IMG/VR virus record: IMGVR_UViG_3300021959_006010
Location: 186,001-250,000 of that record
Length of the DNA stretch: 64,000 nt
Direction: 5' to 3' (one strand)
Notes under the pieces: model-generated
The model's input: the letters and a program-made list of their open reading frames with translations, nothing else
What the model was told of the DNA's origin: nothing
The model's database searches: none
Part shown: positions 4,808-38,799 of the stretch, one piece after another
Layout: each line of letters begins with the position of its first letter
Position numbering within the stretch: position 1 is the stretch's first letter
Made by a program: the position numbers and the translations under genes

Positions 4808-5128
4808 AGTGGAGAGCATTCTGTTGCCCGGGGCTCTCCATAACCGCGAAGGTGCAGATGTTTAGGCTGCGATTGCTACCTCGTCAAAGTTAGCAAAAAC
4901 TTCAGGTTTAAAATTGCTGTTTGCAATTATTGAATTTGGCTGAATAACGTAGGCCAACACGGTTAACTCCACTTCACTTTCACACCTGTCGATCCTATTT
5001 CGACCCCATCAAAAGCATACCCATATATTATATATTGACCTAGGCTATCTGCCTAGCGGGATATGCTTTTGGTGGAGTCGCCGGGTACCGCCCCCGGGTC
5101 CAGAATGTGTCTACGTTGCTTCAACGCT
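4808..5128 (-). ncRNA. ssrA: Circularly permuted (two-piece) tmRNA
   Basis: Acceptor piece ...GACCCGGGGGCGGTACCCGGCGACTCCACCA ends at 5070. A hairpin-forming intervening segment follows. The coding piece starts GGGGTCGAAATAGGATCGAC at 5007. The tag ORF 4924-4862 reads ANSNFKPEVFANFDEVAIAA*. The 3' end has GGCAACAGAA. The 5' and 3' limits are approximate. Confidence 0.92.
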
Positions 5129-5159
5129 AACAGTATTATTTATACACTATATTTGTGCA

Positions 5160-5744
5160 TTAGTCAACTTGTTTTGTAATAATTTCGTAAATCTTTTTCC
5201 AATTCCAAACACAGATTGCATTTCCTGTATAATCTTGGTTATGGTCATGATTAATTAGAATACCGTTAAGGCCTAACTCAATACCAGTATCTACGTTTTG
5301 CGGTTTATCTTCAACCCAATAGCATCCGGTACCTTTATACTCTAACAAAACTTCGTCTTTGTCGGCTCCAGTATCTAAATAAACATATTTTTCAAACACG
5401 GTATCGCCAAACATTTCTCTTAAGTTTTTAGTACGCAAATGCTGTGCATACTGATCGTTGCTTAGGCTTGTAATAGCATGGAAAATATAACCGTGTTCGG
5501 TATGTAACTTTTTAACATAATGCATTGCATCACGTAGTGGAGGTAGTTTGCGGATCCAAGCACTCTCATTAAACATACGTACTAAACGCATTGTTTCGTT
5601 TTTTTCTAATCCGTACTTGATATCCATTTTATAATCACCAGTTACTTTAATTGTGTAACCATGGCGTTTCATCCACTGATCAAAGGCGTACTCCCAATCT
5701 AAAAGTACACCATCGCAATCTGTTAAAATAACTTTATTCTTCAT
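5160..5744 (-). CDS. HAD-family 5'(3')-deoxyribonucleotidase
   Basis: LTDCDGVLLDW (DxDG) and WVEDKP motifs. Confidence 0.8.
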   Translation of the reverse strand: MKNKVILTDCDGVLLDWEYAFDQWMKRHGYTIKVTGDYKMDIKYGLEKNETMRLVRMFNESAWIRKLPPLRDAMHYVKKLHTEHGYIFHAITSLSNDQYAQHLRTKNLREMFGDTVFEKYVYLDTGADKDEVLLEYKGTGCYWVEDKPQNVDTGIELGLNGILINHDHNQDYTGNAICVWNWKKIYEIITKQVD

Positions 5745-13218: not shown

Positions 13219-14862
13219 TTATGATTTAACATTAGATGTAAACATGAGTGTTCCTGTGTCTCCCGGATTGGTACTAGATATAACAACAGTGTCATTATTT
13301 GCAAAACTAGATGCCCATACAATATTTTCAGCATAGTTTGAATCGCCAGTAATGTCATAGTCATCGATAATATTCACTTGTTGTGTTGTCGGTTGTATAC
13401 TAATTGTTAATTTACCAAATCTGTAAAACGTTCTTGTTTGCGACTTATAAGAATATTCGATCTCATATGTCTTATCAGTATCAGCAGCAAATCTAAGAAT
13501 GTTAACTGGCGATGTTGTATCCTGTATAGTTAGTGAGTTCGTAAATCCTTCTTTGTACATAACCGGACCTTCGATACTAGGAATAAACACTGTGCTAGTT
13601 AAACTTACTTGTTCTAGGTTATCTCTGCTTCTACCTGTACTTAAAATATACTGTCTTTCTATCCAATCGTCAACCGAAAAGTTTCCAGTATAGTCAAATC
13701 TAATATTAGAAAAGAAGTCTGGAGTATTAACTGCTGTCCATGCTGCTGGACCTGCATATCTATTTCCTACATTATAAAACTTATTGTGTTTTGAAATGTT
13801 GTCAACACCATAGAGCACTGCTAATCCATTAGCATAAATTTCATCAAACTTGTTATCGAGTATAGTGTTATTGTTAGGATAAGGGTTAGATGCTTCGTAA
13901 GAAGGAACGTTTAATCCAAAACCTATTCCGTAAATGCAGTTTTCAAAATTATTTGATTCTATTAAATTGTTCAGTGTAAATGCATCACTATAAACACCAG
14001 CAAAAAGATTTTCAAATACACAGTTTGAAATAGTGTTAGATGATGTGTAAACTACTCTACTATCGCTTGATATTTGTATTCCGAATACTTCTGATACAAT
14101 TGGATCATTGAATCCGTCAACGTTTGAAAATAATTTATCAGTATTATAATTTCCACTAAATTTAATAGAATCAAATACACTGTCTTTACAGTTCCAAAGA
14201 TGTATCATTGGTCTATCGTTTTCTGTTTCGATATTTTCAATAGTCATTCCACTCATGTAAATATTACTTGGTTGGTTTGATGTTGAAACTGTTGTAGTCC
14301 AAACAGGTACTTCGGCTGTTGATAAATCACTAACTGTAATAAATCCTATCGTAGTTCCTTGTATCTTAATAACAGTTTTATCTATGCCTGCTCCTACAAT
14401 TCTTGTATTTTTCGGAAGGTATATTGTTCCTGTTATAAGGTATTCACCAGGCTCTATGTAAAGTATAGCACGATCTTGTACTGTAGTATTAAGGAAAAGC
14501 TGATAAATGGCAGTCTGTAATGCTACAGTGTCGTCTGTAACCCCGTCTCCTACTACACCGAACGCTCTTACACTTACTCTGTCATCTAGTCTGTCTTGTA
14601 AATTACGAGTTACTGTGCCTGCAATACTTGAGCCGGTTCTATAAGTATAAATGTTAGGTAAATCAAATAGGTTATCGTTTTCTGTTAAAATCTTTGTGTT
14701 ACCTACTGCCGGTGCACCTTCTGATACACTACCATTACCTATGTACAAGTTCTGTGTGTCAATTGCCCATCCTAGCTCACCTGAAGCTAATTGGGGCAAG
14801 CCACTTCCTGACTGTTCTTTACCTCTTCGGATTTGTATTCTTGATATCGATACGACTGCCAC
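13219..14862 (-). CDS. Tail fibre/spike-like protein with a pectin-lyase-like beta-helix
   Basis: N-terminal RIQIRRG...LPQLASGELGW..DT..LYIGNG anchor motif, VSVRAFGVVGDGVTDDT, then repeated N/I-rich beta-helix rungs. Confidence 0.75.
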   Translation of the reverse strand: MAVVSISRIQIRRGKEQSGSGLPQLASGELGWAIDTQNLYIGNGSVSEGAPAVGNTKILTENDNLFDLPNIYTYRTGSSIAGTVTRNLQDRLDDRVSVRAFGVVGDGVTDDTVALQTAIYQLFLNTTVQDRAILYIEPGEYLITGTIYLPKNTRIVGAGIDKTVIKIQGTTIGFITVSDLSTAEVPVWTTTVSTSNQPSNIYMSGMTIENIETENDRPMIHLWNCKDSVFDSIKFSGNYNTDKLFSNVDGFNDPIVSEVFGIQISSDSRVVYTSSNTISNCVFENLFAGVYSDAFTLNNLIESNNFENCIYGIGFGLNVPSYEASNPYPNNNTILDNKFDEIYANGLAVLYGVDNISKHNKFYNVGNRYAGPAAWTAVNTPDFFSNIRFDYTGNFSVDDWIERQYILSTGRSRDNLEQVSLTSTVFIPSIEGPVMYKEGFTNSLTIQDTTSPVNILRFAADTDKTYEIEYSYKSQTRTFYRFGKLTISIQPTTQQVNIIDDYDITGDSNYAENIVWASSFANNDTVVISSTNPGDTGTLMFTSNVKS

Positions 14863-15902: not shown

Positions 15903-15960
15903 AAAAACTCCTATAATTTATTATATGTTAGCAGACTTTTCTGTATTTGTCAAGAAAAAA

Positions 15961-16293
15961 TTATAAATCAGATAGATCAGTAGCACGTTTTGCCATGTCA
16001 CCGACTGTATCTTTTTTACTTGGATTAGGAGAATCTACTTTGTCTTTTGATTCTATTCCTACAGTAACGCCGTCAGGATCAAACTGAACTAGATTCTGTA
16101 AATCAATACTAGAATCGTAAGACACTTTGAAACTGTCGTAATCAAACTGAGGGACTCCAGCCTTCTTCATATAAGAATTTAGCTTATCCCAAGAGACTTT
16201 TGTTTTTTTAGGAAGAGTTTTTAAAATTTGAAGAAGTAAGGCAGTTTCTTCTACTGCCTCACTTACTTTTTTTTTGAACTGCGTTCGATTGAC
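15961..16293 (-). CDS. Start-less open frame, probably translated as a -1 frameshift extension of the upstream gene (or from an internal ATG at 16170)
   Basis: Frame is open 16293-15961 with no ATG until 16170; it overlaps the A AAA AAG heptamer at 16272-16266. Confidence 0.55.
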   Translation of the reverse strand, partial: VNRTQFKKKVSEAVEETALLLQILKTLPKKTKVSWDKLNSYMKKAGVPQFDYDSFKVSYDSSIDLQNLVQFDPDGVTVGIESKDKVDSPNPSKKDTVGDMAKRATDLSDL

Positions 16294-16988
16294 TCACGCT
16301 TTTCGCGACCAGCTTCTTCTTCGCCGCCTGCTGCTGCATCATCTGCACCAAAGTCATCCCCGGCGTCTACATCCATATCCATTGCTGCATCATCTTCTGC
16401 GTCAACGGTAGGCTCCATCCCCATGTCGTCATCGCCCATTGGCTCTTCCATGCCGTCGCCTTCCCCAGTTAGCATCCCTACTCCGTTTGTAAGTGTTGCT
16501 CGTGTGCTTTCCATTGCAGCATACATACTATCCAATGCTGGTTTAATAGTATTAACAAATGCTTCTGACTGCTCTGAGCCCATCTCATCGCGGATAGCAT
16601 CTGCTAGTTCTAACATAGAATCGGACTGCATTTCTGCTGTGTCTTCCATCCAACCAGTAACACGGTCAACCATGTCTTTAGCTGCCATAACTAATTCTGC
16701 TTCGTCTTCTTTGCCTTCACGAACACTTACACGTTCTTCCTCACGCTCAATAATAGCGGCATTTAGAACATCTAAGAACAATTTATCTTTGTTATACTTT
16801 TCAGAATGCACTGAACTAAAACTCTCATTTGTTTCTACTTGCGATAGTTTTGTACGTAGTTTATTGCGAGCATCTTCTAATTGCTCAAACGTAAACTTGT
16901 CTAGGTTAATTCTAGAACCAAACTTTTTAGCTAGGCTTTCGTTAAGTGCCTTAGCTGTAATCGGTTTTGATATCTCTCTAATGTTCAT
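16263..16988 (-). CDS. Probable head-assembly/scaffold-like acidic protein ending in SKKK
   Basis: 241 aa, helical and acidic, MNIREI N-terminus, GGAAGAGA RBS, late-type promoter upstream. Confidence 0.6.
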   Translation of the reverse strand: MNIREISKPITAKALNESLAKKFGSRINLDKFTFEQLEDARNKLRTKLSQVETNESFSSVHSEKYNKDKLFLDVLNAAIIEREEERVSVREGKEDEAELVMAAKDMVDRVTGWMEDTAEMQSDSMLELADAIRDEMGSEQSEAFVNTIKPALDSMYAAMESTRATLTNGVGMLTGEGDGMEEPMGDDDMGMEPTVDAEDDAAMDMDVDAGDDFGADDAAAGGEEEAGREKRESIERSSKKK

Positions 16989-17639: not shown

Positions 17640-17893
17640 TTCTTTGGCATTGTTAATGTAATATTAGAATTTGGTTTAATTTTATTTGGTCCTGCGGGTG
17701 TCTTAGCAGTTAGGTCTACGTTAGTATTTCCTTTATCATCAGTACTTACGTTTGCTTTTTTAAGATCAACTTTAGTAGTTACACCTGGTTTCTTAGGATC
17801 TTCTATTTCAATTTCGGCTCCGGACACACGTTTTACTTTACCTGTTTGCTGTATAGCATTTGGATTAGGTTTTACTATCTCATTAATCTTCAT
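17636..17893 (-). CDS. Small Lys-rich protein with an MKINEI N-terminal motif
   Basis: ATGA overlap; basic composition. Confidence 0.65.
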   Translation of the reverse strand: MKINEIVKPNPNAIQQTGKVKRVSGAEIEIEDPKKPGVTTKVDLKKANVSTDDKGNTNVDLTAKTPAGPNKIKPNSNITLTMPKK

Positions 17894-18204
17894 ATTCTTT
17901 TCGCCTTGCTCGATCTTTTTCTAATTCTAGAACCAGTATTAATTTTTCCTAGTCTACGTGACGCTGGATTATTTGACTTTGTGCGTTTTGTTTTTATTTT
18001 AATTGCACTGCGTTTCCTTGCTTTTGTTTGTTGAAACGCTTTTCTTTTCTTTGCACTTAAAGGAGCAGTACAGGTACTTGCTTTAGCAACAATACGTCCT
18101 TTTCGCGGTCCGCTATTACAACGATACTTTCGAACGTTAGTGTTTCCCTTACGTCCATAAATACTTTGTGCGCCTTCTTCTATCTCAAATTCAGACGCTC
18201 TCAT
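17890..18204 (-). CDS. Highly basic protein, paralog of 18201-18503
   Basis: VRKYRC.SG.RK.R.V...C.AP...KKR and NPASRR shared with the neighbouring ORF. Confidence 0.7.
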   Translation of the reverse strand: MRASEFEIEEGAQSIYGRKGNTNVRKYRCNSGPRKGRIVAKASTCTAPLSAKKRKAFQQTKARKRSAIKIKTKRTKSNNPASRRLGKINTGSRIRKRSSKAKRI

Positions 18205-18503
18205 CTTCTCATTCCTTTTTTACTACTGATACGATTAAGTGATTGTACTCTTCTACTTGCTGGATTTACTCTTTTAGTTCTTTTTGCTTTTCTTGCCATT
18301 TTTGCACCTAGACGAGCTCTTGTTCTTTTAAATTGAACTCTCTTTTTTATATCTGGTGCAGCAAAACATTGTCCAATATTAGAAACTATTCTATTTTTTC
18401 TAATACCGCTAGAACATCTGTACTTCCGTACGACTTTTTTACCTGAACGAGCCCAGGTTTGTTTTTCGATTAAAAGGTCATTAAAAAACTCACGTAGTAA
18501 CAT
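18201..18503 (-). CDS. Highly basic protein, paralog of 17890-18204
   Basis: Same shared motifs; MLLREFF N-terminus; ATAAATA promoter just upstream. Confidence 0.7.
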   Translation of the reverse strand: MLLREFFNDLLIEKQTWARSGKKVVRKYRCSSGIRKNRIVSNIGQCFAAPDIKKRVQFKRTRARLGAKMARKAKRTKRVNPASRRVQSLNRISSKKGMRR

Positions 18504-38552: not shown

Positions 38553-38629
38553 GGGCCTTTAGCTCAATCGGTTAGAGCACCGGACTCATAATCCGTAGGT
38601 TGCGAGTTCGAGTCTCGCAGGGCCCACCA
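38553..38629 (+). tRNA. tRNA-Ile2 (CAU, lysidine type), reads AUA
   Basis: Cloverleaf with CAT anticodon, paired G1-C72, encoded CCA; resembles ileX-type rather than initiator tRNA. Confidence 0.8.
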
Positions 38630-38634
38630 AGTAA

Positions 38635-38711
38635 CTGCCCTTAGCTCAGCTGGATAGAGCAACAGCCTTCTAAGCTGTGGGTCGTAGGTTCGAATCCTAC
38701 AGGGCAGGCCA
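38635..38711 (+). tRNA. tRNA-Arg (UCU)
   Basis: Cloverleaf with TCT anticodon, GTTCGAATC T-loop, encoded CCA. Confidence 0.93.
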
Positions 38712-38715
38712 ATTA

Positions 38716-38799
38716 GCCCGCGTGGTGGAATAGGTAGACACAAGGGACTTAAAATCCCTCGCTTATGGCGTGCCAGTTCGAGTCTGGCCGCGGGCACCA
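38716..38799 (+). tRNA. tRNA-Leu (UAA)
   Basis: Class II cloverleaf with a long variable arm, TAA anticodon, encoded CCA. Confidence 0.93.

What the first reader, a model, noticed from the sequence alone, without database searches (positions are those of the whole stretch)
15961..16293. Programmed -1 frameshift signal (A AAA AAG plus hairpin) fusing a scaffold-like protein to a start-less ORF
Seen on the minus strand: ...TCA AAA AAA AAG TAA, with the heptamer at 16272-16266. A 12-bp hairpin follows (AAGTGAGGCAGT-AGAAGAA-ACTGCCTTACTT, 16264-16234). The -1 frame continues ~100 codons (VSEAVEETALL...DLSDL) and has no nearby start codon. Established: A AAA AAG with a 3' stem-loop drives dnaX frameshifting, and phages use -1 shifts for assembly proteins. 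Inference: two products of 241 aa and ~340 aa.
Basis: partly seen in the sequence, partly recalled or inferred. Interest (0 to 1): 0.62.

Follow-up and report, generated by a model that had tools for sequence, protein, structure and literature searches.

The report
Conserved -1 recoding site, marine jumbo phage
A run of nine A's at the end of a gene in an uncultured marine jumbo phage is a real, strongly conserved switch that lets some molecules continue into the -1 frame and gain an extra 101-residue domain; it is a new example of a known trick, and whether the ribosome or the RNA polymerase does the slipping is still open.

Summary
On the minus strand a 241-codon ORF ends TCA AAA AAA AAG TAA. 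A 12-bp hairpin starts 1 nt after the heptamer. A 101-codon ORF follows in the -1 frame, open only 6 codons upstream, with its first start codon 32 codons in.

The signal is conserved. The window lies in a 275-kb IMG/VR jumbo-phage record. In 56 distinct IMG/VR loci and 31 further metagenome loci (54-79% protein identity), every homologue has an A8-A10 run, a nearby 0-frame stop, and a 98-128-codon -1 ORF wherever the contig reaches that far. That ORF's product is conserved from its first residues. Only 4 of about 4,500 database relatives are in-frame fusions, and each has exactly one extra A.

Programmed -1 recoding giving 241-aa and 342-aa products is well supported (about 0.9). The mechanism is unresolved. 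A position-specific excess of 3' hairpins and the conserved G after the run favour ribosomal frameshifting. A run kept at 8-10 A's, longer than a heptamer needs, favours RNA-polymerase slippage. So does one metatranscriptome contig with A10 where near-identical DNA contigs have A9.

"Scaffold-like" is not supported; the function is unknown. This is a new member of a known kind.

The parts
16263..16988 (-). Gene A: 241-codon ORF plus TAA. All-alpha protein with long helices at 63-136 and 138-174, then a disordered acidic tail (about 180-241) ending SSKKK.
   Evidence: AF2 model, pLDDT 74. No Pfam family; PHROG 14154 'virion structural protein', E 4e-13. 4,687 unnamed relatives.
16267..16275 (-). 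A9 homopolymer run, the slip site for either mechanism.
   Evidence: One of only two A9 runs in the 275-kb record. A8-A10 in all 87 homologous loci.
16266..16272 (-). Slippery heptamer A_AAA_AAG, in phase with the 0 frame.
   Evidence: Same phase in about 50 of 57 loci; the rest have A_AAA_AAA in phase.
16263..16265 (-). 0-frame stop codon TAA, directly after the heptamer.
   Evidence: In homologues the stop lies 0-13 nt after the run.
16231..16268 (-). 3' hairpin. Core is a 12-bp stem with a 7-nt loop (16264-16234), extendable by 3 bp. The G+C-rich core GGCAG/CUGCC starts 7 nt after the heptamer. Read on the + strand, the same hairpin followed by T9 looks like an intrinsic terminator.
   Evidence: -19 kcal/mol, z -4.45. 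Family-wide excess of structure at this position only. Terminator-like hit on the + strand.
15961..16266 (-). ORF B in the -1 frame: 101 sense codons (15964-16266) plus TAA. It encodes a winged-helix-like domain (residues 1-70), a disordered linker and a conserved C-terminal MAKRATDL peptide. It is reachable only through the shift.
16168..16170 (-). First in-frame start codon of ORF B (ATG, Met33, invariant in 38 aligned homologues). It lies inside the predicted domain, after helix 1 and strand 1.

Best explanation
This is a programmed -1 recoding site at the 3' end of gene A of an uncultured marine jumbo phage.

Most decoding events stop at TAA and give the 241-aa protein A, a coiled-coil with an acidic tail. 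A fraction enter the -1 frame at the A run and give a 342-aa A-B fusion. The fusion carries an extra winged-helix-like domain and a conserved C-terminal peptide.

I take the main route to be -1 ribosomal frameshifting. Two tRNA-Lys re-pair from AAA-AAG to AAA-AAA on the heptamer A_AAA_AAG while the ribosome is held up by the hairpin just downstream. This is as in E. coli dnaX and the orfAB fusions of IS3-family elements. RNA-polymerase slippage on the same A9 run (adding one A to the mRNA) probably contributes as well and gives the same protein.

Shown: the signals, their conservation, and that the stretch before Met33 is coding in the -1 frame.
Inferred: that both proteins are made, their ratio, and which machine slips.

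My confidence that recoding of some kind occurs is about 0.9. The figure given in this field (0.5) is for ribosomal frameshifting being a major route.
For: 1. Anatomy: heptamer, adjacent stop and stable hairpin.

2. Conservation. 56 distinct IMG/VR loci (56-79% identity to A) and 31 further metagenome loci (54-71%) all have an A8-A10 run and a 0-frame stop 0-13 nt later. Wherever the contig reaches that far, a 98-128-codon -1 ORF follows.

3. The -1 frame is coding from the slip site. There are no stops in its first 32 codons in 57 of 57 loci, against a mean of 3.8 and 3.5 stops in the other two frames. Codon-position diversity follows the order pos2 < pos1 < pos3, as in the rest of B. E3 is invariant and L15 and L29 are at least 90% conserved, all upstream of any start codon.

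4. No start codon at or before the conserved N-terminus in 54 of 56 loci. Helix 1 and strand 1 of the predicted domain are encoded before Met33.

5. Run-length changes keep the frame relation. In A8 loci the preceding Ser codon is TCT instead of TCA. In A10 loci the G has become A. All still need a -1 shift.

6. Points favouring the ribosome. Excess RNA structure is found only in the 50 nt after the heptamer: mean z -1.79 and 42% of loci below -2, against -0.07 to -0.67 and 4-14% at seven control positions. Different clades use different stems. A hairpin 3' of the run cannot act on a polymerase that has not yet transcribed it. The base after the run is G in 54 of 57 loci, although the first residue of B varies among V, D, A, G and E, all encoded by GNN codons.

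7. In distant relatives (about 30% identity, L082-L084) A and B are separate, adjacent or overlapping genes and B has its own ATG. B is therefore a real protein module.
Against: - No direct evidence of either product.
- The run is kept at 8-10 A's, although a heptamer needs only six A's plus G. Synonymous positions (TCA, AAA) are held as A. That points to polymerase slippage, known to be efficient on runs of 9 A/T (PMC5009743).
- One metatranscriptome contig has A10 where 98.5-99.2% identical DNA contigs of the same sampling series have A9.
- The hairpin is not universal: 58% of loci have z above -2. Covariation on 12 sequences is weak.
- Its base starts only 0-7 nt after the heptamer (1 nt in the window), tighter than the usual 5-9 nt.
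- There is no upstream Shine-Dalgarno-like stimulator as in dnaX (read).
- No Rfam frameshift family matches.
- The alpha-type tmRNA in the window hints at an alphaproteobacterial host. If that host has a tRNA-Lys(CUU), AAG would be less shift-prone (argument from PMC5009743).
Confidence: 0.5

Rival explanations
1. Programmed transcriptional slippage is the main or only route. RNA polymerase stutters on the T9 template run and makes a share of mRNAs with A10. Ordinary translation of those mRNAs gives the same 342-aa A-B fusion, as in Thermus thermophilus dnaX. The 3' hairpin would then serve another purpose.
For: - A run of 9 is the classic length for efficient slippage by bacterial RNA polymerase (PMC5009743).
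- The run is held at 8-10 A's in all 87 loci, beyond what a heptamer needs.
- L086, a contig of the Monterey Bay metatranscriptome Ga0256411, has A10. DNA contigs L148 and L131 from metagenomes of the same series have A9. The extra A is the only indel in 1,612 nt against L148.
- No phage RNA polymerase family was found in the 275-kb record, so host polymerase is likely used.
- No phage tRNA-Lys.
- A second A9 run in the same genome shows the same geometry.
Against: - The RNA evidence is a single contig that differs from the DNA contigs at 12-18 other positions.
- A10 also occurs in a contig labelled as a metagenome (L088), so it may be a strain variant, or RT, PCR or sequencing stutter.
- Slippage does not explain the position-specific excess of hairpins 3' of the run.
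- It does not explain the conserved G after the run.
Confidence: 0.35
2. There is no recoding. B is made on its own from the invariant Met33 (ATG at 16170) as a 69-aa protein. The A run simply encodes a lysine tail.
For: - Met33 is invariant in 38 aligned homologues.
- In distant relatives B is an independent gene.
Against: - The 32 codons before Met33 are stop-free in 57 of 57 loci.
- They show a coding pattern of variation and contain invariant and near-invariant residues.
- They encode helix 1 and strand 1 of the predicted domain.
- No clear ribosome-binding site precedes the ATG (read).
- It does not explain why the A run, the adjacent stop and the -1 relation are always kept.
Confidence: 0.05
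3. It is a sequencing or assembly error in a homopolymer, or a decaying gene. The true gene would be a single in-frame ORF with A10.
For: Four database relatives are in-frame fusions with one extra A.
Against: - Only about 4 in-frame versions among about 4,500 relatives, from many independent assemblies and sources.
- All 87 loci inspected need the -1 shift.
- Run-length variants (A8, A10) compensate so that the shift is still needed.
Confidence: 0.02
4. The hairpin plus T9 is an intrinsic terminator for antisense (+ strand) transcription, not a frameshift stimulator. This concerns the hairpin only, not the recoding.
For: The consensus scan flags a terminator-like site on the + strand at 16239-16259, followed by the T run.
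Against: - All neighbouring genes are on the minus strand.
- In most homologues the stem lies 1-8 nt from the run and has varied shape.
- The window shows 3 terminator-like hits against 1.1 expected, so the scan is weak evidence.
Confidence: 0.1

Closest known systems
E. coli dnaX tau/gamma -1 frameshift (A_AAA_AAG plus 3' stem-loop)
   Same: Identical heptamer. A stable 3' hairpin. Two products that share an N-terminus.
   Different: In dnaX the shift shortens the protein; here it lengthens it by a whole domain. No upstream Shine-Dalgarno-like stimulator. The hairpin is closer to the heptamer. The run is A9 rather than A6. No match to any Rfam frameshift family, dnaX element included.
IS3-family (IS911, IS150) orfA-orfAB -1 frameshift
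   Same: This is the closest geometry. A_AAA_AAG lies near the end of orfA. The 0-frame stop follows shortly. The downstream ORF has no start of its own. A 3' structure is present. The fusion adds a functional domain.
   Different: This is not a transposable element. The proteins are unrelated. The run is longer.
Thermus thermophilus dnaX (transcriptional slippage on a run of 9)
   Same: The same run length of A's in the mRNA. One extra A changes the C-terminus. The host polymerase would do the work.
   Different: In Thermus the long form is the unedited one, and slippage truncates it. Here editing would extend the protein. RNA heterogeneity here rests on a single environmental contig.
Phage lambda gpG/gpGT and T7 gene 10A/10B
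   Same: Phage genes in which a minority -1 shift appends a C-terminal extension, fixing the ratio of two forms.
   Different: There is no tape-measure gene or capsid gene in the context. The slippery sequences differ (G_GGA_AAG in lambda). There is no homology.
Homologues in more distant phages (loci L082-L084)
   Same: The same two protein modules in the same gene order and neighbourhood. The end of A (..ILSGR) lines up with ..ILSKKK of the L011 clade.
   Different: A and B are separate genes lying side by side. In L083 the stop and start overlap as ATGA. B has its own ATG, and there is no A run.

Membership tests
-1 programmed ribosomal frameshift site (X_XXY_YYZ plus 3' stimulator) | Slippery heptamer in phase with the 0 frame | tested here: met
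   A_AAA_AAG at 16272-16266. In phase in all loci, as A_AAA_AAG or A_AAA_AAA.
-1 programmed ribosomal frameshift site (X_XXY_YYZ plus 3' stimulator) | Downstream ORF in the -1 frame, overlapping, without its own initiation site, and coding from the shift site | tested here: met
-1 programmed ribosomal frameshift site (X_XXY_YYZ plus 3' stimulator) | Stable RNA structure about 5-9 nt 3' of the heptamer, conserved among relatives | tested here: inconclusive
   The window hairpin is -19 kcal/mol, but its base starts 1 nt after the heptamer. There is a family-wide excess of structure at this position only. It is absent in more than half the loci, and covariation is weak.
-1 programmed ribosomal frameshift site (X_XXY_YYZ plus 3' stimulator) | Both products made from one mRNA species | not testable with these tools
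No proteomics available.
dnaX-type frameshift element (Rfam) | Match to the curated covariance model; upstream Shine-Dalgarno-like stimulator | tested here: not met
   No frameshift family on the coding (minus) strand up to E = 10. The one frameshift family listed, HIV_FE, is on the opposite strand at 18.6 bits against a gathering score of 45. No SD-like motif in the 20 nt upstream.
Programmed transcriptional slippage | Homopolymer run of about 9 A/T, conserved | tested here: met
   A9 in the window. A8-A10 in 87 loci, with synonymous sites held as A.
Programmed transcriptional slippage | mRNA run length heterogeneous and longer than in the DNA | tested here: inconclusive
   One metatranscriptome contig has A10 against A9 in near-identical DNA contigs. 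This is a single case, not the same genotype, and there are no read counts.
Phage scaffolding protein | Homology to a scaffold family, or position beside portal, protease or major capsid genes | tested here: not met
   No Pfam family, no PDB sequence match, no significant fold match. The neighbours are NifU-like, exonuclease, RNR and small unknown genes.
Phage scaffolding protein | Elongated helical protein with a flexible tail | tested here: met
   AF2 model: helices 63-136 and 138-174, with a disordered acidic tail. This is a resemblance only.
Tail assembly chaperone G/GT frameshift | Two overlapping ORFs immediately upstream of the tape-measure gene | tested here: not met
   The downstream genes are NifU-like and an exonuclease.
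Winged-helix domain (ORF B residues 1-70) | H-S-H-H-S-S topology with significant structural matches | tested here: inconclusive
   The topology fits. The top matches are almost all winged-helix domains. But Foldseek E is 0.26 or worse, and VIA Z is 5.5-7.3, which the tool itself rates as borderline.

The most novel reading that the evidence does not exclude
An abundant, uncultured lineage of marine jumbo phages uses a reusable 'TCA-A8-G' cassette at more than one gene to attach optional C-terminal modules to a fraction of the protein molecules.

Both A9 runs of this genome sit at ORF ends with a conserved -1 extension. The switch would work at two levels at once: host RNA-polymerase slippage on the A9 run, and ribosomal -1 frameshifting helped by a 3' hairpin. 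In this lineage the cassette has replaced the start codon that more distant relatives use for a separate gene B.
Probability: 0.3. Interest if true: 0.65.

Novelty: new member of a known kind. Interest (0 to 1): 0.55.

Why it matters
The family is very common in ocean metagenomes: 4,687 relatives at E <= 1e-5, none with a functional name. Gene callers stop protein A at KKK. They either miss ORF B or would start it at Met33, inside its predicted domain. The 342-aa form and its winged-helix-like domain are therefore absent from current annotations.

The site is a clean natural case for separating ribosomal from polymerase slippage. It has the same heptamer as dnaX, the same run length as Thermus dnaX, and hundreds of natural variants (A8, A9, A10; with and without a hairpin).

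Relatives with two separate genes show how a start codon can be exchanged for a recoding signal.

It is not a new principle. Specialists would see it as a well-supported new example.

Tried and rejected
- Cultured phages. tblastn of A and B against the GenBank phage collection found nothing.
- Function. Pfam gave no family for A or B. PDB sequence profiles gave nothing for A and only chance-level hits for B. Foldseek against PDB gave nothing significant for either. BFVD matched only uncharacterised proteins of uncultured phages, Agrobacterium phage Atu_ph07, RaK2 and PaBG. The ESM Atlas returned only unnamed viral clusters, plus a DUF3008 cluster that reflects an inserted module absent from this protein.
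- Paralogy. A and the protein at the second A9 site showed no significant similarity in BLASTP.
- Covariation. RNAalifold on 12 sequences of one sub-clade found only one pair with compensatory change. That sub-clade uses at least two alternative stems, so a single consensus fits poorly.
- RNA versus DNA census. It returned only two Monterey Bay DNA contigs and no further RNA contigs. Many of its hits were unrelated. One was a contig of a human-gut metagenome (L100), which I left out of all analyses.
- Sample types. The library type of two of the four in-frame fusion contigs (JGI 3300066314 and Logan SRR24908301) could not be established.
- Rfam. No frameshift-element family matched.
- A first positional folding script did not return and a second was killed. 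I re-ran them in smaller form.

Full report
**1. What is in the sequence**

Read on the minus strand, an ORF of 241 codons (16988..16263) ends ...AGT TCA AAA AAA AAG TAA.

- The A run is nine long (16275-16267) and is followed by G at 16266.
- The classical heptamer A_AAA_AAG (16272-16266) is therefore in phase with the 0 frame. The stop codon follows directly.
- One nucleotide after the heptamer a hairpin begins: a 12-bp stem with one G.U pair and a 7-nt loop (16264-16234). Three more pairs can extend it.
- Its MFE is -19 kcal/mol, z = -4.45, and none of 200 shuffles folds as well.
- Its G+C-rich core starts 7 nt after the heptamer.
- The -1 frame is closed until 6 codons before the heptamer. 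It then stays open for 101 codons after the slip point, to a stop at 15963-15961. Its first ATG, GTG or TTG is codon 33, at 16170.

A -1 shift on the heptamer, or one extra A in the mRNA, gives the same 342-aa protein with junction SSKKK-VSEAVEE.

**2. Where the window comes from**

- The window is positions 186001-250000 of a 275,366-bp IMG/VR virus record, estimated 77% complete. That makes it a jumbo phage of roughly 350 kb.
- The protein is also recorded on a 346,714-bp contig. A relative sits on a 357,559-bp contig.
- G+C content is 37%.
- The window carries ribonucleotide reductase, a DnaB-like helicase, PRPP synthetase, a carbamoyltransferase, three tRNAs and an alphaproteobacterial-type permuted tmRNA.
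- No cultured phage in the GenBank collection has a detectable homologue of either ORF.

**3. Comparative evidence for recoding**

IMG/VR holds at least 507 relatives of protein A. The best 80 loci reduce to 56 distinct sequences at 56-79% identity. A pattern scan of metagenome contigs added 31 more loci, at 54-71% identity. In every one of these 87 loci:

- (a) gene A carries an A8, A9 (about 85% of loci) or A10 run at its very end;
- (b) the 0-frame stop lies 0-13 nt after the run;
- (c) an ORF of 98-128 codons follows in the -1 frame, unless the contig ends first;
- (d) in most loci the -1 frame is open for only 2-16 codons upstream of the run. In several a TAA sits immediately before the run, so the shift can only happen on the run itself.

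Run-length variants are compensated. A8 occurs where the preceding Ser codon is TCT instead of TCA. A10 occurs where the G has become A. The -1 relation is always kept.

The product of the -1 ORF is conserved from its first residues: E3 is invariant and L15 and L29 are at least 90% conserved. In 54 of 56 loci the first possible start codon lies 9-52 codons further on.

In the first 32 codons the -1 frame has no stop in 57 of 57 loci. The other two frames average 3.8 and 3.5 stops, and none of them is open in any locus. Nucleotide diversity by codon position is 0.54 / 0.38 / 0.62, the same order as in the rest of B. The stretch before Met33 is therefore translated in the -1 frame.

**4. Is it a homopolymer error?**

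No.

- The word-index protein search found 4,687 relatives of A. Of the best 120, 116 end in KK or KKK within the last eight residues, and 3 are in-frame A-B fusions.
- Searching again with a fused protein, which would rank fusions first, found only four fusions among about 4,500 relatives.
- All four have exactly one more A than their nearest relatives: A10 against A9, or A9 against A8.
- The interrupted arrangement is the rule across thousands of independent assemblies.

The whole 275-kb record has only two A9 runs.

**5. Which machine slips?**

The two candidate mechanisms give the same protein, and the evidence is divided.

For the ribosome:

- The 50 nt after the heptamer fold more stably than shuffled controls: mean z -1.79, with 42% of loci below -2.
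- Seven control positions in the same genes give mean z -0.07 to -0.67, with 4-14% below -2. Raw MFE is lowest there among windows of equal G+C.
- Different clades build the hairpin from different sequences.
- A hairpin downstream of the run cannot influence a polymerase that has not yet made it.
- The base after the run is G in 54 of 57 loci, while the first residue of B varies among V, D, A, G and E. All of these have GNN codons. This suggests selection on the nucleotide.

For the polymerase:

- A heptamer needs only six A's and a G. The run is nevertheless kept at 8-10 A's by holding synonymous positions as A.
- Nine is the length at which bacterial RNA polymerase is known to slip efficiently. 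This is the basis of dnaX expression in Thermus thermophilus (PMC5009743).
- No phage RNA polymerase family was found in the record, so the host enzyme probably transcribes the gene.
- Contig Ga0256411_1012033 (L086) carries A10. Ga0256411 is listed among the metatranscriptomes of the Monterey Bay 2016 series (PMC6646334).
- Two DNA contigs from metagenomes of the same series, L148 (Ga0228623) and L131 (Ga0228627), are 99.2% and 98.5% identical and carry A9. The extra A is the only indel in 1,612 nt against L148.

Cautions on that last point:

- It is a single contig.
- It is not the same genotype (12-18 substitutions).
- A10 also occurs in one contig labelled as a metagenome (L088).

Other weaknesses of the ribosomal case:

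- The hairpin is missing in more than half of the loci.
- Covariation is weak.
- The stem starts closer to the heptamer than usual.
- There is no upstream Shine-Dalgarno-like element.
- No Rfam frameshift family matches.

My estimate:

- Recoding of some kind: about 0.9.
- Ribosomal frameshifting as a major route: about 0.5.
- Polymerase slippage as the main route: about 0.35.
- The two may well act together.

**6. What the proteins are**

Protein A:

- It has no Pfam family. Its only family hit is PHROG 14154, 'virion structural protein', whose 771-position profile equals the length of an Atu_ph07 protein that the fold search also matched.
- AlphaFold with 38 homologues (pLDDT 74) gives long helices at 63-136 and 138-174, followed by a disordered acidic tail.
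- Fold searches return only uncharacterised phage proteins and generic coiled coils.

ORF B:

- Its model (pLDDT 74) has H-S-H-H-S-S topology in residues 1-70, then a disordered linker, then a conserved C-terminal MAKRATDL peptide.
- The best structural matches are almost all winged-helix domains, but at borderline scores: Foldseek E of 0.26 or worse, and VIA Z of 5.5-7.3.
- Helix 1 and strand 1 lie before Met33. A protein started at Met33 would therefore lack part of the domain.

Gene context:

- The neighbours are small unknown ORFs upstream. Downstream lie a NifU-like gene, a PD-(D/E)XK exonuclease, a tail-fibre-like protein and ribonucleotide reductase.
- There are no capsid, portal or protease genes nearby.
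- 'Scaffold-like' is therefore only a resemblance in composition and shape. The function is unknown.

By analogy with lambda G/GT, T7 10A/10B and IS3 orfAB, the likely purpose is to set a fixed ratio. A minority of the oligomer-forming A molecules would then carry the B module. This is inference.

**7. Evolution**

In three more distant loci (about 30% identity to A, same gene order) A and B are separate genes.

- B has its own ATG. It overlaps the stop of A as ATGA in L083, and follows it within a few bases in L082. There is no A run.
- The end of A in those loci (..ILSGR) lines up with ..ILSKKK in the L011 clade.
- In the window's clade a recoding signal therefore stands where relatives have a start codon.
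- Other relatives carry extra modules between the acidic tail and the terminal KKK, but still end in KKK.

**8. Comparison with known systems, and novelty**

- It works like E. coli dnaX and IS3-family orfAB if the ribosome slips. It works like Thermus dnaX if the polymerase slips.
- It is not a member of the dnaX Rfam family, nor of the G/GT chaperone system, nor of any scaffold family (see the membership table).
- I found no paper describing this family or its recoding in the library searched. That is absence of evidence only.
- Verdict: a new, unusually well conserved member of a known kind of recoding, in an abundant uncultured phage lineage.

**9. Limits**

- There were no raw reads and no proteomics.
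- The loci are related to each other, so counts of loci overstate independent events.
- Structure predictions are of moderate confidence.
- One scan hit from a human-gut metagenome (L100) was left out of all analyses.

Noticed in passing
Outside the window: G000 minus strand, A9 run at 92349-92341 (locus L207, about 2233-2861): This is the only other A9 run in the 275-kb record, and it has the same geometry. An ORF of about 180 aa reads TCA AAA AAA AAG and stops 7 codons later. The -1 frame, open only 3 codons upstream, adds 36 residues ending ..AVMYATATKMAKE. Four distinct relatives keep A9 plus this extension (L209, L213, L225, L229). In two others (L215, L219) the same peptide is encoded in frame. 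This is probably a second recoding site.
   Followed up: partly
Loci L086, L148 and L131 (relatives, not the window): A contig from a Monterey Bay 2016 metatranscriptome carries A10 and an in-frame A-B fusion. DNA contigs from metagenomes of the same series, 98.5-99.2% identical, carry A9. This is a lead for RNA-level insertion of one A.
   Followed up: partly
window 4808-5171 (-): A phage-encoded, permuted (two-piece) tmRNA of the alphaproteobacterial type: Rfam alpha_tmRNA at 127.8 bits. ARAGORN gives the tag peptide ANSNFKPEVFANFDEVAIAA. It hints that the host is an alphaproteobacterium.
   Followed up: no
window 38553-38799 (+); also G000 157737-159245: A tRNA cluster (Met-CAT, Arg-TCT, Leu-TAA) lies in the window. 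Seven more tRNAs lie elsewhere in the record. None is tRNA-Lys.
   Followed up: no
window 17890-18204 and 18201-18503 (-): Two tandem, overlapping ORFs (104 and 100 aa) encode very basic paralogous proteins. Both share a 'KYRC..G.RK.RIV' stretch and Lys/Arg-rich tails. Neither has a PHROG family.
   Followed up: no
window 16239-16275 (+): Read on the opposite strand, the frameshift hairpin followed by T9 matches the consensus of an intrinsic terminator, although no + strand gene is nearby.
   Followed up: partly
Loci L027, L062 and L124; L002, L029 and L031: Some relatives carry two A9 runs. In L027 and L062 the extra run lies 48 nt upstream of the terminal run, inside gene A, and in L124 further upstream; a slip at the extra run would truncate the protein. 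In L002, L029 and L031 the 'TCA-A8-G-AT' cassette is duplicated, so that the -1 frame itself contains a second run.
   Followed up: no
Proteins P0047, P0005, P0112 and P0115 (relatives): Relatives of A carry 50-90-residue modules, one of them DUF3008, inserted between the acidic tail and the terminal KKK. The KKK end is kept in all of them.
   Followed up: no
window 15925-15953 (-): A good sigma-70-like promoter match (TTGACA, 17-nt spacer, TAACAT, with a TG extension) lies directly after the stop of ORF B and before the NifU-like gene.
   Followed up: no
window 13219-14862 (-): A 547-aa protein has an Mtd_N domain and a pectate-lyase-like beta-helix, resembling a tail fibre or spike. It sits among nucleotide-metabolism genes rather than in a structural module.
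   Followed up: no
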